From: Magallana gigas
Lineage: Eukaryota
Direction of reading: 5' to 3'
Assembly: GCF_963853765.1 (NCBI RefSeq)
Contig: NC_088855.1
Span: 20,150,001-20,214,000, forward strand
DNA: 64,000 bases
Shown here: in pieces, positions 312 to 37,418 of the stretch
Layout of the letters: each line of letters begins with the position of its first letter
How positions within the stretch are numbered: the stretch's first letter is position 1
Notes under the pieces: generated by a model
Told to the model about the DNA's origin: nothing
Seen by the model: the letters and a program-made list of their open reading frames with translations, nothing else
Databases searched by the model: none
Made by a program: the position numbers and the translations under genes

Positions 312-1531
312 ATGGGTTCCTTCATTGTTGCTGTTTCATGCCTTTTTGCTGTCATTAGCGCTCGTCCCCAATATGGAAAAGGTAAATTTAAACATTTATT
401 TTACTCTTATTAGAACTTTGATTAAAAAAATTGTTTAATAATTTTTTCCCTGTAAAATGAAGATAAAATCAAAGAGACAATTTTAATTTTTCTCTTTAAG
501 GTGGTAATGTAGGCATGTCTAACATGATGATGAACATGATGCCAGCTAACATGGGCATGAACATGATGCCAGCTAACATGGGCATGAACATGATGCCAGC
601 TAACATGGGCATGAACATGATCCCAGCTAACATGAACATGATCCCAGCTAACATGAACATGATCCCAGCTAACATGAACATGATCCCAGCTAACAGGGGC
701 ATGAATATGGTGCCAGCTAACATGGGAATGAACATGATGCCAGCCAACATGGGAATGAACATGAAGAATGGAGCAATGAACATGATGATGCCAGCTAATA
801 TGGGAATGAACATGATGCCAGCTGATATTGAAATGAGCATGCCAGCAGGTATGGGTAATAACAAAGGAGCAAATAACATGATGCCAATTGATATGGAAAT
901 GAGCATGCCAGCCGGTATGGGTAACAACAAAGGAGCAAATAACATGATGCCAATAGATATGGAAATGAGCATGCCAGCTAATATGGGTAACGGAGCAAAT
1001 AACATGCCAATGAAGGTGGAAATGGACATGCCAGCTGCTAATGGTAATAACATGGGAGCAAATAACATGATGCCAATAGATATGGAAATGAGCATGCCGG
1101 CTGGTAATGGTAACAACAAAGGAGCAATGAACACCATGATGCCAGCTAATATGGGCATGAACATGATGCCAGCTAATATGGGCATGAACATGATGATGCC
1201 AGCTAATATGGGCAACATGATGATGCCAGCTAATATGGGCAACATGATGATGCCAGCTAATATGGGCAACATGATGAACAGAGCTATGAACATGATGATG
1301 ATGCCAATGAATATGGGTATGATGAATGGTGGAAACAATGGCGGTATGCCCAATGCTATGATGGGAAACATGATGGGAGCTGGTAACAACAAAATGAAAT
1401 GTAAGTACATAGGTCATATGTCTGTACAACTGCAAAAATTTAAATAAAATGATTTTTTGCGAGTACGTGTAAAAGAAAGTATTTTCCTATGTATATTGAT
1501 GTCTTGTTTTATCATTACAGCTCTCTATTAA
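312..1531 (+). CDS. SP1: secreted Met/Asn/Pro/Gly-rich repetitive protein, 326 aa (MGSFIVAVSCLFAVISA-RPQYGKG...MMPANMGMN repeats...NNKMKSLY)
   Basis: Exons 312-381, 501-1400 and 1521-1531 all have GT-AG boundaries and phase-1 introns that join in frame. The first coding exon is a signal peptide whose ATG directly follows the acceptor AG. About one third of residues are Met. AATAAA at 1609. The non-coding first exon is probably upstream of the window. Confidence 0.85.
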
Positions 1532-3620
1532 GTTTTTAATACACCAACACACTGGATCATAGAGGAAGGACCCCGGGGATGAACTAGATTTTTTTCCATT
1601 GCACATTGAATAAAATTTGTATTCAAATTTAAACTGTTTATATTATTTTGTTTATAGTAAGGAGGGTTTAAAAATGTTTTTAATTCATTCTTTTCAAATG
1701 TGCATGTTCACTGCAATCAAAATGATACTTTCAATTCACACTTTAAATTCGGTTTTCGTTTACAAATTCATAATTTATCTCCCGTGATGCAACATGCGTT
1801 GACCTTATCTCATAGTAAAAAGAAAACATTAACCGAAACCAATATTTAAGATTAACATTGTATTATTTACAAAATATGGAAATGCTATCAAACGTATTCG
1901 GATTTAAGAAATGCTCATAGACTTGGACGTGTAGTTGTAGGAGATAATGTTGGAGGCCAATCTAAGGGTCCAGAAAGATTCTCTTATTCCTTGTGGTTGT
2001 CAAAAGATCGTTCAAAAAAGAAGTATTGTAATTGCACATTACATAATTAATGTGTCAAATGACTGATGAATCATCGTGTTGCAAATTAGAATTTGCCATT
2101 TTTCACAAGATGCCAATGTTGATAAGATTTACAACAAAGAAAACTTTGCGGTAGGTTATCATTGCCGTTTAGTAAAACATTCTTAGTAATCAATTTACGA
2201 ACTTTCCATTACACCAAATTAAGCTGTTACTTTCATCTCTCTATGAATTAAATTTAATAACATTTAAATGGAGTGCTTTTTGTCACACTCTGTGTCAATT
2301 TTTGTTCTGAATTATATTAGGTCAAAGTTGTGTGAAAGTGCAATAAACGATGTTATGTTGTCACCACTCTGAAATTTCCGTATTCTGTTTTAGTTTCCTA
2401 GCAAGTTTTAGCACGTAAGCGGAAGTAAATGCATTTGATCCTCAGCTTAGACTGATCAAAGTAAAAAAAATAATTGTTCGGGTTATTTAATAGGGTCACA
2501 AGATAAACCAAAAACTGAGATCTCATGTCATGACTCCTTGTACGCTCCATTTCATACGGTTAATGTTTACAAATGTCTTAATTTGTCGTTACGAGGGAAA
2601 CTTTAAACAGAAATTACAATGAATATGTGCTCCTAAATGCTGTTAAACTCTACATCAATGTCAAAGAAAACCTGAAGCACATTGCAAAGTCCTCCATTTT
2701 GGAGCCAAATGCTTTCAGAGGAAAGAGTGTAAAAGCCAAAAAAAAATCCTTCAAGTTTCCATACCATCATAATAATAGTAGTAAGTAAATACACGCTACA
2801 TTGTTTATACACAAAACATAAAATCTATGGGTATTTAGATCACATAAATTCCTTAGTATTTTCATAAGTACACATATTACAATTTTAAAAGATATTTTTT
2901 AATGCACGCTTTGATGCAAGCGAGTCTCACAACATCTTAAATACTAATAATTTATTGCTAAAACTGATCAAAGATTTATTTTCTTAATTGTATCCCATAT
3001 GAGGCGGATGCAGAAATGAAGGTTGAGAGTATGACACGAGTTAATAAAGCATTTTTAAAGTGTGATGCTCTGAAAGTAATGAGAGTTAAAATGTAGAGAG
3101 TTGCAGAAATTAAGAAAACATTAGCTATCCTATTCAAATATAATTGATTAAAGGTGGTTGTACGACCCAAACAGTCTGGACACTCATTTTTCATCTTCAT
3201 TACTACATTTTTGGGAGATGTTGGAGACAGGTGCCTCCTTAATCCCTTTGACTCTAGAAAGACTAGAAATTCACCAAACTTTCAAGATAAGATGACTTAT
3301 TTAATATGGTATCTTAAAACGTTATAACCCAATATCAACTCTTATATATGCTCGAACGAAAATAAATTCCTAAGCTGATCGAAATTATAACAAAACACTC
3401 TCTCCCTTCAAAAAGTTAATCAAATGTAGCATACATGTATTGCGATTGTTGCAAGATTTTCTATAAACTATAGCGTGCCAAAGATTTCTTTCTCGTTTTC
3501 TGAAGACTTGTGAGTATATTACCATAAGCTACAAAAATAACATGACATAAACTACGTATACGAAATCTAATGATGTGTAAATCGGGTTTGATGGTTTTGG
3601 CCATTTTTAGACAAACATAA

Positions 3621-34711: not shown

Positions 34712-36580
34712 GCTCTCTCGTCTTATTACAAAGATTTAACATACGTTTGTTTAGTTTACTTGTCAAAGATAGATATAACATTTGAAAAGTGAAAATTTGT
34801 GTAAAACTTTTGACAGCTAATTGAAGGACTTAACCCTTGGGACATGGAATATTGTTCGCTATGATACATCGAAACCAATGTAATTTTGAATTATCAATAA
34901 GTAAATATAAACAAATTAATAAAATATTTATGCATATTTTCCAATACAATGTTTAAATCTTAATGTGGAAATAGTTCTCATATATCGGGTGTATAAGATC
35001 GGTTCTAAAAATTGTTGTGGGATACACATCGTTAATAAGGCAAGCGTTAACATATATATGTAAGTGTTAGGTATAACGTTAGAGAAAACGTATCTACATT
35101 TCTATATTTAAATCAATATGACCTTCAATTTTCATATCTAAATTTCTTAATGTGAAATGTAGTAATTTTAAAACAACTATAATAATGAAAAAAAAGATCA
35201 TTCTTATAAACTTCCGTTATTCGTATTTTTGTTGGAAAAGCTCGTAAGAGGTCCTGATTGAAGCAAAGTTATACATTTGTCCTGTAAAAAGTTTTTATTA
35301 ATGGATAGTTCTCTGTAATGATTATCATTTTAATTAACTTATTGCCGTTGATGTTTCAGTTACATGCAGAATTATAGTAGGTTTTTGTACCAAGATAAAA
35401 TTCTACAAATACAGCTCGTGTACGTTGCTCTAAATTATCTATATAATGCCATTATGATAAAATCACGTTTGATTTACCGCGGTCGATTATTTATTTTATT
35501 CCTTACATGTAAGCCTTCACTTTAGAGTTGTTCATGTGTTTGGATCCATATTCTAGACATTAAGCTACATTGACCATCTGTTACGAGAACTAACTCTTAC
35601 TGGATAAAGTACAGTAAAATTTTCAAGTTAAAAAAGAATTTATCGCAAACTAGATTAAGACTGTATGTATATCAGTATACATTTCAATGATAAAACTGCT
35701 ATTTCACTATAAAAGTTTTTTTTCTGTTTAAAACCTCAAATTTCCTACACATAATCCAATCTTTCATTGTAACCTCTTCTACAATATATTTTTGAACTTG
35801 AGCTACTCAATTTACAAATTAAATCGAATGTTGAAGACTGTAGTGTTTGACAGTTACTGTATTTTTTGTGTCATTTAAAAAATATTTAACTATCTAGAAC
35901 ATTTAATGAATTTCAAGTATATAATTGAAAAAGAAAAACAAGCACGTACATATTACTAGTATTCTACATTATAAATTTGATCTCTTAATAAATGCTTTAC
36001 AGTGATTATCGTGTATGTATATGTACATATTAATCGCAAAATCCTTTTGAAATATTATGAGGCAGAGACACCCGGGTTACATGATTAATTAGGCAGATTT
36101 GGTATCATCTGTGCTATGTTGTAAACAGGGCTATATAAAGGTATACCTTTTATAAATAGCATATAGCATTTGGCTATATGTCGCTAACAGATGACATAAA
36201 CATATTGTAACTGCTCACCCCCGAATGTTCAATTTATCAGATATCTCCGTTTCTTTAATACTGTACGTTATTCTAGCCCAACTGTATTTAATTTTTCCGG
36301 AAAATGATTCAATGTATAGTATTTGTAGGTTGTCAGATCATAGAAATAAGAATTATGTGAGTAAAAAAGTATGTAAAAACCTTCACATGTATATTTTTGT
36401 GTAAATTACCCAATGCAAGAAAGTGCTATTCATTAATATACAAGAGTTTTATTTAAATTTGTCACATTTATTAGCATATAAATGCACAAAATAAATAATG
36501 CAAAAATAGATAAATGAAATTATGATTCAAAACGAAATGGAATGATTCTTGTCTTTTTCGAAGAAACATCACCAGAATGT

Positions 36581-37418
36581 TCAAAAATAGCTCGATCCGA
36601 AGAATCTGCTCATTGGGTACGAGGCGAGTCTGGTTTGACCAACCGCTTCCATCATCGCGGAACTGAGTACTTCGTCCGCACTGGGAAATCGTAAAGCGGC
36701 GGTGGTTTCAGAATTAGCTGCTGGCGTCATTGCACCACCCATCATGGCGTTGTTGTTACCCGTCTTTGTTGCAATTGGTTGCGTCATAGAAGTCATCAAT
36801 CTTCTGGACGTGGATGAAATCATTGGATTATTACTCTGAGCCATCACTGAATTTGTCAACATAGACATTATACTGCTCATTGTAGATATGAAAGGATCTG
36901 TTGAGGCTGTTGAAGAAGACATCATTGGATTCACTGATAGGTTATTGGGCATCAGAGATGCAGTGGATTGTCTAGGATTGGCAATGTTGTTCCGTAACGG
37001 TGACATATCATTTCGGACTGAGTTAGCCATGGTTGAAAGGATGCTGCGCTGCACTGGGCTGTTTGCCATTGACATGACGCTAGCTACGGGCATTCCTGTT
37101 GCCATGGCAACGGTTCCAGCGTCAGTGATGGCGGATGATGGGAATAATGCAGAATCCATACGCATGCGAGGCAATGAATTGCCTGTCATCCATTTCTTCT
37201 TGTAGACTTTTGATGGAGGAAAATAATAAACTGAAAAAAGAAAAGTATAAAATGATCAGCAAACTTGATACATTCTTTTTTTCGTAAAATAAAATCGATG
37301 TACTGATATGAAGATCATTTTCACTAAGTATCAAAATGAATATAACATTACCTTTGTAAGTTGCATCAATACAATTGATGCCCAAAAGCATAAAGAGTAA
37401 ACACATTTTGGATTTCAT
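36581..37418 (-). CDS. SP7: secreted Met/Ser/Ala-rich protein, 238 aa, distant relative of SP5/SP6
   Basis: Exons 37418-37352 (MKSKMCLLFMLLGINCIDA-TYK) and 37230-36581 (VYYFPPSKVYKKKWMTG...MSRFFGSSYF*), phase 1. TATATAAG on the minus strand at ~37514-37521. Confidence 0.8.

What the first reader, a model, noticed from the sequence alone, without database searches (positions are those of the whole stretch)
312..37418. Telechelic design: Tyr/Lys-rich ends flank Tyr-free Met-rich cores, suggesting cross-linked elastomer precursors
Seen: mature N-termini RPQYGKG (SP1), RGYGPG (SP2), IPKSIKYYKKH (SP5), TYKVYYFPPSKVYKKKW (SP7); C-termini MKSLY, MKSSYM, NKFGYSKYY, RFFGSSYF. The long cores contain essentially no Tyr. 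In SP1 and SP2 the terminal Tyr is supplied by its own tiny last exon. Known: abductin networks are cross-linked through tyrosine derivatives, and DOPA-quinone/Lys or dityrosine coupling cures many mollusc matrices. As I recall, abductin has Tyr near both ends (AGYGGG... and ...GGKGY), similar to SP2's RGYGPG. Inference: these are end-linked chains whose core length sets mesh size and elasticity.
Basis: partly seen in the sequence, partly recalled or inferred. Interest (0 to 1): 0.7.

Follow-up and report, generated by a model that had tools for sequence, protein, structure and literature searches.

The report
Tyrosine-capped methionine-rich oyster matrix proteins
A cluster of oyster genes encodes secreted, floppy, methionine-rich repeat proteins whose few tyrosines sit almost only at the two chain ends and are conserved there, the layout long suspected but never proven to let scallop hinge rubber (abductin) be tied into a network.

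Summary
All quoted termini reproduce from canonical GT-AG gene models. RNA contigs confirm every SP2 splice, including a 15-nt micro-exon and the last exon encoding S-S-Y-M-stop. The assembly gap (31791-31935) is intergenic and touches no exon.

Five more SP1-like genes lie just upstream of the window. They share the same plan: signal, x-Y-G cap, Tyr-free Met/Asn/Gly repeat core, M-K, then a last exon encoding S-x-Y. In 11 mature proteins, 34 of 37 Tyr lie within 13 residues of an end: about 14-15% Tyr in the end decamers against 0.2% in cores.

SP7's caps are invariant in two other oyster-like assemblies at about 50% identity. Pinctada LMP, a proteomically proven hinge-ligament protein, has the same layout. 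Exceptions are SP3, which has no C-terminal Tyr, and Saccostrea SP5, where N-terminal YY is replaced by FH.

Terminal-Tyr cross-linking is already published speculation for abductin, and reviews call its cross-links unknown. Neither tissue of expression nor chemistry was testable here.

The scan had already noted this same cluster, not other DNA. Verdict: new members of a known kind, moderate interest.

The parts
312..381 (+). SP1 first coding exon: signal peptide plus mature cap R-P-Q-Y-G-K-G; ends in phase 1. ATG directly follows an acceptor AG, so a 5'UTR exon lies upstream.
501..1400 (+). SP1 core exon: Tyr-free Met/Asn/Gly/Pro/Ala tandem repeats with 27-, 21- and 66-nt units; ends ...N-N-K-M-K
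1521..1531 (+). Coding part of SP1 last exon: S-L-Y-stop
   Evidence: Canonical splice sites, and homology of donor and acceptor with RNA-verified SP2 and five paralogs. No RNA evidence for SP1 itself.
7518..7558 (+). SP2 5'UTR exon. A TATA-like box lies at about 7476-7483.
   Evidence: joint 7556(+2)>7657(+2)
7659..7731 (+). SP2 exon: signal peptide plus cap R-G-Y-G-P-G; phase 1
7835..8161 (+). SP2 core exon: (M-G-G-N-M-M-P)n, 21-nt unit, Tyr-free. An in-frame 9-nt insertion allele follows 7868 in two runs.
8277..8291 (+). SP2 15-nt micro-exon encoding G-M-S-M-K
   Evidence: Letters between joints in four runs (table 5c)
8393..8487 (+). SP2 last exon: S-S-Y-M-stop (8393-8406), then 3'UTR, with poly(A) after 8487
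17877..19269 (+). SP3 gene (exons 17877-17940, 18661-18927, 19244-19269). It has the N-terminal F-P-Y cap but ends T-L-E-F with no C-terminal Tyr, so it is the exception.
   Evidence: The Saccostrea ortholog keeps L-P-Y-G and ...T-L-E-F.
27172..28132 (-). SP5 gene (exons 28132-28054 and 27932-27172). Caps are I-P-K-S-I-K-Y-Y-K-K-H and N-K-F-G-Y-S-K-Y-Y. The core has 10-aa S-T-N-P-M-M-S-A-M-S repeats and a conserved block.
31791..31935 (.). Assembly gap, intergenic, in the spacer between the SP5 and SP6 duplication blocks. Not part of any gene model.
32821..33753 (-). SP6 gene, a diverged tandem duplicate of SP5 (95% aa identity; 81-89% nt identity over about 3 kb) with identical caps
36581..37418 (-). 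SP7 gene (exons 37418-37352 and 37230-36581), equal to LOC105335596. Caps are T-Y-K-V-Y-Y-F-P-P-S-K-V-Y-K-K-K-W and S-R-F-F-G-S-S-Y-F. It is mostly predicted disordered, with a helical block at residues 56-97.

Best explanation
The region is part of a tandem cluster in the Pacific oyster genome. At least 12 genes were modelled; two more Met-rich reading frames upstream were not resolved. The window covers C3:20.150-20.214 Mb and the cluster reaches at least 35 kb upstream.

The genes encode secreted, largely disordered, Met-rich tandem-repeat proteins of the abductin / ligament-methionine-rich-protein (LMP) type. Each chain has three parts:
- a signal peptide;
- short non-repeat end caps that hold nearly all the Tyr, plus Lys in SP5-7;
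- a Tyr-free coding minisatellite as core.

Shown here:
- the gene models;
- the end-restricted Tyr;
- purifying selection on the caps against freely changing cores;
- the same layout in a proteomically verified hinge-ligament protein.

Inferred: the caps are the tie points through which soluble precursors become an insoluble matrix. The most likely route is oxidative Tyr chemistry (dityrosine/trityrosine by peroxidase, or DOPA-quinone by tyrosinase reacting with the adjacent conserved Lys). The repeat array would act as a flexible spacer whose length varies by slippage.

Single-Tyr caps (SP1, SP2, pA, pB) could only extend chains. Multi-Tyr/Lys caps (pC-pE, SP5-7) or the invariant M-K Lys would be needed for branching.
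For: - Gene models and RNA-verified SP2 splicing.
- 34 of 37 Tyr lie within 13 residues of an end in 11 proteins. Tyr is 13.6% and 15.5% in the end decamers against 0.2% in cores, and Arg and Asp/Glu show no such bias.
- Seven paralogs (SP1, SP2 and pA-pE upstream) keep x-Y-G and M-K|S-x-Y with the intron in the same phase, while their cores differ. Both TAT and TAC codons occur at these sites.
- The 830-aa neighbour starts G-V-Y-G.
- SP7 caps are invariant in L008 and L009 at about 50% identity.
- The SP5 C-cap K-x-x-Y-x-K-Y-Y is kept in Saccostrea.
- Pinctada LMP from insoluble hinge ligament reads Y-G-P-R-N-R-G-K ... (M-M-M-K-P-D)n ... P-Y-N-L-Y-Q-G. A second ligament protein there ends ...A-S-I-Y.
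- Abductin has Tyr at its extremities, proposed as cross-link sites.
- Tyrosinase is present in insoluble Pinctada shell matrix.
- SP7 is predicted mostly disordered.
- Cores are tandem arrays, and SP2 has a 9-nt length allele.
Against: - No tissue information was available, because runs are coded. Hinge, shell, periostracum and cement all remain open.
- There is no chemical evidence for any Tyr modification.
- The review literature says abductin's cross-links are unknown. From my own memory, unverified here, a 1987 study reported 3,3'-methylenebistyrosine to be a hydrolysis artefact and found Lys-derived cross-links in hinge ligament.
- SP3 lacks a C-terminal Tyr in two genera.
- Saccostrea SP5 has F-H instead of Y-Y at the N-cap.
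- pB, pE and SP3 each have one internal Tyr.
- The conserved caps include F, P, W, G and S as well as Y and K, which suits a recognition or binding motif as well as a reactive one.
- The 830-aa protein has R-R-R right after its G-V-Y-G cap. If that site is cleaved, the Tyr would be removed.
- Paralogs are not independent samples.
Confidence: 0.5

Rival explanations
1. The caps are non-covalent anchors or stickers rather than covalent cross-link sites. In this reading, Tyr/DOPA plus Lys motifs bind calcium carbonate fibres, chitin or partner proteins, or drive coacervation, as in mussel foot proteins. The chains would be tie molecules between mineral elements.
For: - SP5-7 caps are Y/K/F/P/W-rich (Y-K-V-Y-Y-F-P-P-S-K-V-Y-K-K-K-W). 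They are conserved as whole motifs, not just at Tyr.
- In Saccostrea SP5 an aromatic and a basic residue (F-H) replace Y-Y.
- Pinctada LMP is described as the framework between aragonite nanofibres.
- The resemblance to the mfp-1 decapeptide is from my own knowledge.
Against: - The SP1/SP2-type caps hold a single Tyr in a Gly-rich context, which is too little for an adhesive patch.
- Ligament Met-rich proteins resist acid and detergent extraction, which points to covalent links.
Confidence: 0.2
2. Cross-linking runs through Lys and/or Met (sulfilimine Met-Lys bonds, or lysyl-oxidase-type links). The terminal Tyr are conserved for another reason, such as processing or secretion.
For: - The Lys in M-K-S-x-Y is invariant in all seven SP1/SP2-type genes and always follows Met.
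- Sulfilimine links are proposed for abductin and for Met-rich shell proteins.
- Heavy Met oxidation is seen in LMP peptides.
Against: - It does not explain why Tyr in particular is excluded from cores and invariant at both ends.
- SP1 has several core Lys, so Lys is not end-restricted there.
Confidence: 0.12
3. The pattern is a by-product. Repeat arrays homogenised from a Tyr-free unit exclude Tyr, and the ends are ordinary flanks inherited with the terminal exons of recently duplicated genes.
For: - Cores are coding minisatellites.
- pA and pB are near-identical recent duplicates, and SP5 and SP6 are 95% identical.
- Phase-1 signal-peptide exons are common in secreted proteins (my own knowledge).
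Against: - End decamers hold about 14-15% Tyr, some five times a typical proteome value.
- The Tyr persist between SP1, SP2 and pC-pE, whose cores no longer align, and they persist through synonymous codon changes.
- The same holds across species for SP7.
- The same layout occurs in unrelated-looking Pinctada LMP.
Confidence: 0.1
4. The proteins are not structural. They are secreted Met-rich metal (Cu(I)) or oxidant scavengers, and their ends are irrelevant to assembly.
For: M-x-M and M-x-x-M spacing resembles copper-binding Met motifs (my own knowledge). Oysters handle much copper.
Against: - The architecture matches proteomically verified ligament proteins.
- Tandem expansion and variable repeat arrays are typical of matrix proteins.
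- No evidence for this reading was obtained here.
Confidence: 0.04

Closest known systems
Abductin (bay scallop Argopecten irradians; Cao, Wang & Bayley 1997, as summarised in PMC9999432 and PMC13052691)
   Same: A short secreted chain with a Gly/Met-rich repeat core. A Tyr follows the signal peptide directly (residue 20 after a 19-residue signal) and another Tyr sits near the C-terminus. Few Lys. Terminal Tyr are proposed as cross-link sites. SP2 (142 aa, 38% Met, R-G-Y-G-P-G ... K-S-S-Y-M) is the nearest match in size and plan.
   Different: The repeat unit is M-G-G-N-M-M-P (SP2) or M-M-P-A-N-M-G-M-N (SP1), not G-G-F-G-G-M-G-G-G-X. These proteins have no Phe, far more Met, Asn and Pro, and less Gly. 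Sequence homology could not be tested, because no abductin sequence was in hand and HMMER found nothing with the SP2 core. Tissue is unknown.
LMP, ligament methionine-rich protein of Pinctada fucata (Suzuki et al. 2019; sequence in PMC7591529 supplement 4)
   Same: A signal peptide, then Y-G-P at the mature N-terminus, as in SP2's G-Y-G-P-G. A long Tyr-free Met-rich tandem-repeat core. Two Tyr in the last seven residues. Found in the insoluble fraction of the hinge ligament.
   Different: The LMP repeat M-M-M-K-P-D is charged and places a Lys in every unit. The oyster cores here are nearly uncharged (Met/Asn/Gly/Ala/Pro). LMP is reported to adopt a spiral conformation guiding aragonite nanofibres (cited in PMC13080008). 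No such data exist for these genes.
Resilin (insect rubber; dityrosine/trityrosine network)
   Same: Disordered Gly-rich chains cross-linked only through Tyr in S-Y-G-type contexts. The SP1/SP2 caps place Tyr in x-Y-G-x-G.
   Different: Resilin carries a Tyr in every repeat, giving many junctions per chain. Here Tyr is confined to the chain ends, so junction density would be set by chain length. There is no evolutionary relationship.
Mussel foot proteins (e.g. mfp-1 decapeptide) and other DOPA/Lys-rich mollusc adhesives
   Same: The SP5-7 caps combine Tyr, Lys and Pro (Y-Y-F-P-P-S-K-V-Y-K-K-K), which resembles tyrosinase substrates that become DOPA next to Lys.
   Different: In mfps the motif repeats throughout the protein. 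Here it occurs once per end. DOPA was not tested.

Membership tests
Abductin | Secreted short protein with an N-terminal signal peptide | tested here: met
   SP2 is 142 aa with a hydrophobic leader ending ...M-V-C-A. The cleavage site is inferred by the -3/-1 rule, not by a predictor.
Abductin | Decapeptide repeats G-G-F-G-G-M-G-G-G-X; about 58-60 mol% Gly, with Met at the repeat centre and Phe present | tested here: not met
   The SP2 repeat is M-G-G-N-M-M-P and the SP1 repeat M-M-P-A-N-M-G-M-N. There is no Phe, and Met is 33-38%.
Abductin | Detectable sequence homology to scallop abductin | not testable with these tools
   No abductin sequence was obtainable. HMMER with the SP2 core returned nothing because of low complexity.
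Abductin | Tyr at both extremities of the mature chain | tested here: met
   SP1, SP2 and pA-pE all have x-Y-G and S-x-Y ends. The abductin feature is taken from PMC9999432 and PMC13052691.
Abductin | Major protein of the inner hinge ligament (resilium) | not testable with these tools
   Runs are coded and no tissue label was available. No paper in the library links these genes to a tissue.
LMP-type ligament methionine-rich proteins | Signal peptide, Met-rich tandem-repeat core and Tyr-bearing non-repeat ends | tested here: met
   compared with the LMP sequence.
LMP-type ligament methionine-rich proteins | Recovered from the acid- and detergent-insoluble ligament matrix | not tested
   This needs proteomics of oyster ligament.
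Tyr-cross-linked elastomer (resilin-like chemistry) | Dityrosine, trityrosine or DOPA-derived cross-links present in the mature material | not testable with these tools
   A chemical assay is required. Reviews state that abductin's cross-links are unknown.
Tyr-cross-linked elastomer (resilin-like chemistry) | Intrinsically disordered chains between junctions | tested here: inconclusive
   The SP7 AlphaFold model has pLDDT below 50 for 186 of 239 residues, with one confident helical block at 56-97. The alignment was shallow (6 sequences), and SP1 and SP2 were not modelled.
Telechelic (end-linked) network | Reactive groups confined to chain ends | tested here: met
   True for Tyr: 34 of 37 lie within 13 residues of an end. 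Lys is end-confined only in SP5-7.
Telechelic (end-linked) network | Junction functionality of 3 or more, so that end-linking gives a network rather than linear chains | tested here: inconclusive
   SP1, SP2 and pA have one Tyr per end, and pB has the same caps plus one internal Tyr; their caps alone allow only chain extension unless trityrosine or the adjacent Lys takes part. pC-pE have 1+2 Tyr in their caps, SP5 and SP6 have 2+3, and SP7 has 4+2.

The most novel reading that the evidence does not exclude
The locus encodes a genetically programmed end-linked protein network. Mono-Tyr-capped struts of graded length would be SP2 (about 120 aa), pA-pE (about 170-210), SP1 (about 310) and perhaps the 830-aa neighbour. 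They would be co-secreted with multi-Tyr/Lys-capped connectors (SP5-7) that supply branching. Mesh size, and hence stiffness and resilience of the oyster hinge or another matrix, would then be set by repeat-array length and paralog mix. This would be the first natural telechelic protein elastomer system, and it would settle the long-open question of how abductin-type rubbers are cross-linked.
Probability: 0.12. Interest if true: 0.8.

Novelty: new member of a known kind. Interest (0 to 1): 0.5.

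Why it matters
The cross-links of abductin-type bivalve rubbers have been unresolved since the 1960s. A multi-gene family offers a sharper handle than the single scallop sequence, because only two tiny end caps are conserved while the cores drift.

It gives concrete peptides to look for. CNBr would destroy the Met-rich cores and leave the caps. 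It also gives natural 'variants' with one, two or several terminal Tyr, and a proven micro-exon architecture for the caps.

For biomaterials, the locus supplies a series of natural Tyr-capped disordered spacers of graded length. If the caps turn out to be anchors rather than cross-links, that matters equally for how mineral fibres are tied together in hinge ligaments.

Tried and rejected
- HMMER word-index search with the SP2 core: 1504 candidates, none significant. The low-complexity query is uninformative, so this says nothing about absence of relatives.
- SP5 core search: only one hit, from Saccostrea.
- Exhaustive profile search with the SP7 family: five proteins in all. SP7 looks oyster-restricted within that library.
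- Pfam on all cores: nothing.
- Own-genome searches with the SP1 and SP2 cores gave weak hits on other chromosomes. The five I fetched (L004, L005, L019-L021) hold no Met-rich frames and were rejected as composition matches. The same search missed the upstream paralogs, so its counts are lower bounds.
- The LMP LC-MS/MS table was checked for unmodified end peptides. It is uninformative, because the tryptic N-cap peptide is too short and a truncated 127-aa model was searched.
- Papers on LMP (PubMed 31604125, 40879455) and PMC1692928 are not held.
- No paper holds these oyster sequences or LOC105335596. No abductin sequence could be retrieved.
- The C-terminus of the upstream 830-aa gene could not be resolved without RNA. 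Two acceptors are possible.
- The idea that SP5/SP6 is an uncollapsed-haplotype artefact around the gap is rejected. The copies are only 81-89% identical at DNA level, and the gap lies outside both blocks.
- The first call to the look-up of sequencing runs failed because the machine was busy; the repeat succeeded.

Full report
**What is there**

The window is AT-rich animal DNA. Earlier scan notes name the genome as Pacific oyster. This agrees with a 96% match of one encoded protein to XP_011437855.1 of Crassostrea gigas.

Six-frame scanning finds six Met-rich coding bodies between 312 and 37418. From the sequence I built spliced models with canonical GT/AG sites:
- SP1: 326 aa, plus strand, exons 312-381, 501-1400 and 1521-1531.
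- SP2: 142 aa, plus strand, exons 7659-7731, 7835-8161, 8277-8291 and 8393-8406.
- SP3: 118 aa, plus strand.
- SP5: 279 aa, minus strand.
- SP6: 270 aa, minus strand.
- SP7: 238 aa, minus strand.

All quoted termini reproduce exactly.

**The gap**

The N run at 31791-31935 lies between SP5 and SP6. The SP5/SP6 duplication blocks are 26648-29896 and 32289-35188, with 81-89% nucleotide identity. They are therefore real diverged tandem copies, not an uncollapsed haplotype. The gap sits in the spacer between them, 885 bp beyond SP6's stop codon. No claimed feature crosses it. I did not try to fill it, and what it hides is unknown.

**RNA evidence**

Nineteen public runs hold part of the SP2 stretch, and most hold only about 35-39% of its words, as a spliced transcript would. 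Contigs of four runs were laid on 7400-8600. They show:
- a 5'UTR exon joined to 7659;
- the joint 7731>7835 in all four runs;
- a joint from 8161 to 8393 carrying exactly the letters of the 15-nt micro-exon 8277-8291;
- a poly(A) tail after 8487.

These are contigs, and only two of the runs are recorded as RNA. The missing introns and the poly(A) tail make the spliced reading secure all the same.

SP1 has no RNA evidence here. SP7's junction equals the NCBI model. The junctions of SP5 and SP3 match the Saccostrea cucullata gene models.

**The pattern is larger than reported**

Five more SP1-like genes, pA-pE, lie there, 4-27 kb upstream. All seven SP1/SP2-type genes share one plan:
- a first coding exon that starts at the ATG and ends in phase 1 after x-Y-G-x-G. 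The caps read A-P-T-Y-G-G-G twice, L-P-Y-G-G-G, F-A-T-Y-G-G, F-P-T-Y-G-S-G, R-P-Q-Y-G-K-G and R-G-Y-G-P-G;
- a repeat core;
- the donor ATGAAAT|gta(a/g)gt, encoding M-K;
- a last exon encoding S-x-Y with zero to three further residues. The ends read S-S-Y-V-G twice, S-A-Y-K-A-Y, S-A-Y-A-T-Y twice, S-L-Y and S-S-Y-M.

Both Tyr are invariant, although the cores of SP1, SP2 and pC-pE no longer align. Both TAT and TAC codons occur at these positions. The 830-aa gene also begins its mature chain with G-V-Y-G. Its C-end is unresolved.

**Statistics**

Among 11 mature proteins, 34 of 37 Tyr lie within 13 residues of an end. The exceptions are pB Y34, pE Y100 and SP3 Y64. Placing each protein's Tyr at random gives a mean distance as small as observed with P from below 2e-5 to 0.03 in ten proteins. 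SP3 is not significant.

Tyr makes up 13.6% of the first ten and 15.5% of the last ten residues, against 0.2% of 1,891 core residues. Lys makes up 9.1% and 11.8% against 1.0%, but its end bias is significant only in SP5-7. Arg and Asp/Glu show none.

The cores are coding minisatellites with 21-, 27-, 30- and 66-nt units. That explains mechanically why they lack Tyr. It does not explain a roughly five-fold Tyr excess in the flanks. Paralogs are not independent, so these P values describe the pattern rather than prove selection.

**Orthologs**

SP7 relatives at about 50% identity exist in Logan contigs L008 and L009; the species of both contigs is unknown. After rebuilding their first exons, T-Y-K-V-Y-Y-F-P-P ... 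K-K-K-W and S-R-F-F-G-S-S-Y-F are invariant, while the Met-rich middle is poorly conserved. Two internal blocks are also conserved. AlphaFold predicts one of them as helices at residues 56-97 with pLDDT about 80, in an otherwise low-confidence chain. The same block links SP5 and SP7 (BLASTP E = 2e-7) and is nearly identical in Saccostrea SP5.

Saccostrea SP5 keeps the C-cap (K-K-Y-T-Y-H-K-Y-Y) but has K-F-H-K-N-R where the Pacific oyster has K-Y-Y-K-K-H. Saccostrea SP3 keeps L-P-Y-G at the N-end and ...T-L-E-F at the C-end. SP3 thus consistently lacks a C-terminal Tyr.

**Literature**

Pinctada fucata LMP was identified by mass spectrometry in the insoluble hinge-ligament fraction. It reads signal, Y-G-P-R-N-R-G-K, then (M-M-M-K-P-D)n, then H-P-T-P-Y-N-L-Y-Q-G. 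A second ligament protein there has a Met/Asn/Gly-rich tail ending A-S-I-Y. This is independent experimental support that the layout belongs to hinge-ligament matrix proteins.

For scallop abductin, PMC13052691 places conserved Tyr at precursor positions 4 and 20. From memory, not verifiable in this library, a 1987 study reported methylenebistyrosine to be a hydrolysis artefact and found Lys-derived cross-links.

**Mechanism**

These features are shown:
- secreted Met-rich repeat proteins;
- Tyr restricted to conserved caps;
- variable cores, including a 9-nt length allele in SP2.

It is inferred that the caps tie chains into an insoluble matrix and that the cores act as flexible spacers.

A polymer argument (also inference) limits the simple picture. 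One Tyr per end joined as dityrosine only lengthens chains. A network needs junctions of three or more arms. Such junctions could come from trityrosine, from DOPA-quinone adding to the invariant neighbouring Lys, or from partners with several Tyr per cap (pC-pE, SP5-7).

Rival readings remain open: non-covalent anchoring to mineral or chitin, Lys/Met-based links, an evolutionary by-product, or a non-structural role. The tissue of expression is unknown. I found no paper describing these oyster genes.

**Verdict**

These are new oyster members of the abductin/LMP kind of Met-rich matrix protein. SP5-7 form an apparently oyster-restricted subfamily.

Noticed in passing
window 7868 (SP2 core): In-frame 9-nt insertion allele (TATGGGCGG) in contigs of runs X1 and X7 but not X13 or X2. 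This is repeat-length polymorphism in the core, while the caps show no differences.
   Followed up: partly
about 30-50 nt after the stop codons of SP1 (window about 1565-1580) and of upstream paralogs pA-pE: A conserved 3'UTR motif, roughly GACCCCGAGGAGCTCTG, is kept among SP1-like paralogs although surrounding UTR sequence differs. It may be a regulatory or localisation element.
   Followed up: no
window 24328-25413 (+): An intronless-looking ORF with a coiled-coil-like N-half and a C1q domain (Pfam PF00386, E = 3e-20) sits inside the Met-rich gene cluster, between SP3 and SP5.
   Followed up: partly
upstream of window: genome C3:20117955-20120444 (-): The 830-aa Met/Gly/Pro-rich gene has a mature start G-V-Y-G followed at once by R-R-R, and a 15-nt micro-exon (G-S-M-M-R) like SP2's. 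The R-R-R could be a convertase site that removes the Tyr cap. Its last exon is unresolved.
   Followed up: partly
upstream of window: genome C3:20115402-20116121 (+): A further Met-rich open frame (240 aa, Asn/Met/Ser/Pro-rich) holds ...S-N-S-Y-I-N-I-S-P-R-R-K-F-S-T-S-L-Y-K... near its end. No gene model was built for it.
   Followed up: no
window 36581-37230 (SP7 residues 56-97) and SP5/SP6 equivalents: A conserved block (D-A-G-T-V-A-x-x-T-G-M-P-V ... I-L-S-T-M-A ... R-N-D-M) is shared by SP5, SP6, SP7 and their orthologs. It is predicted as three short helices with pLDDT about 80. No Pfam family matches and its function is unknown.
   Followed up: partly
window 30224-30922: Tandem repeats of 130-293 bp (92-95% matches), resembling a repetitive or mobile-element array, lie in the spacer shortly before the assembly gap.
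   Followed up: no
window 29036-29106 and 34660-34719: (CT)n / (TC)n microsatellites lie at equivalent positions upstream of the SP5 and SP6 promoters, within the duplicated blocks.
   Followed up: no
Pinctada LMP peptides, PMC7591529 supplement 3: Most detected LMP peptides carry one to three oxidised Met. This fits old reports of methionine sulfoxide in ligament protein and bears on any Met-based cross-link idea.
   Followed up: no
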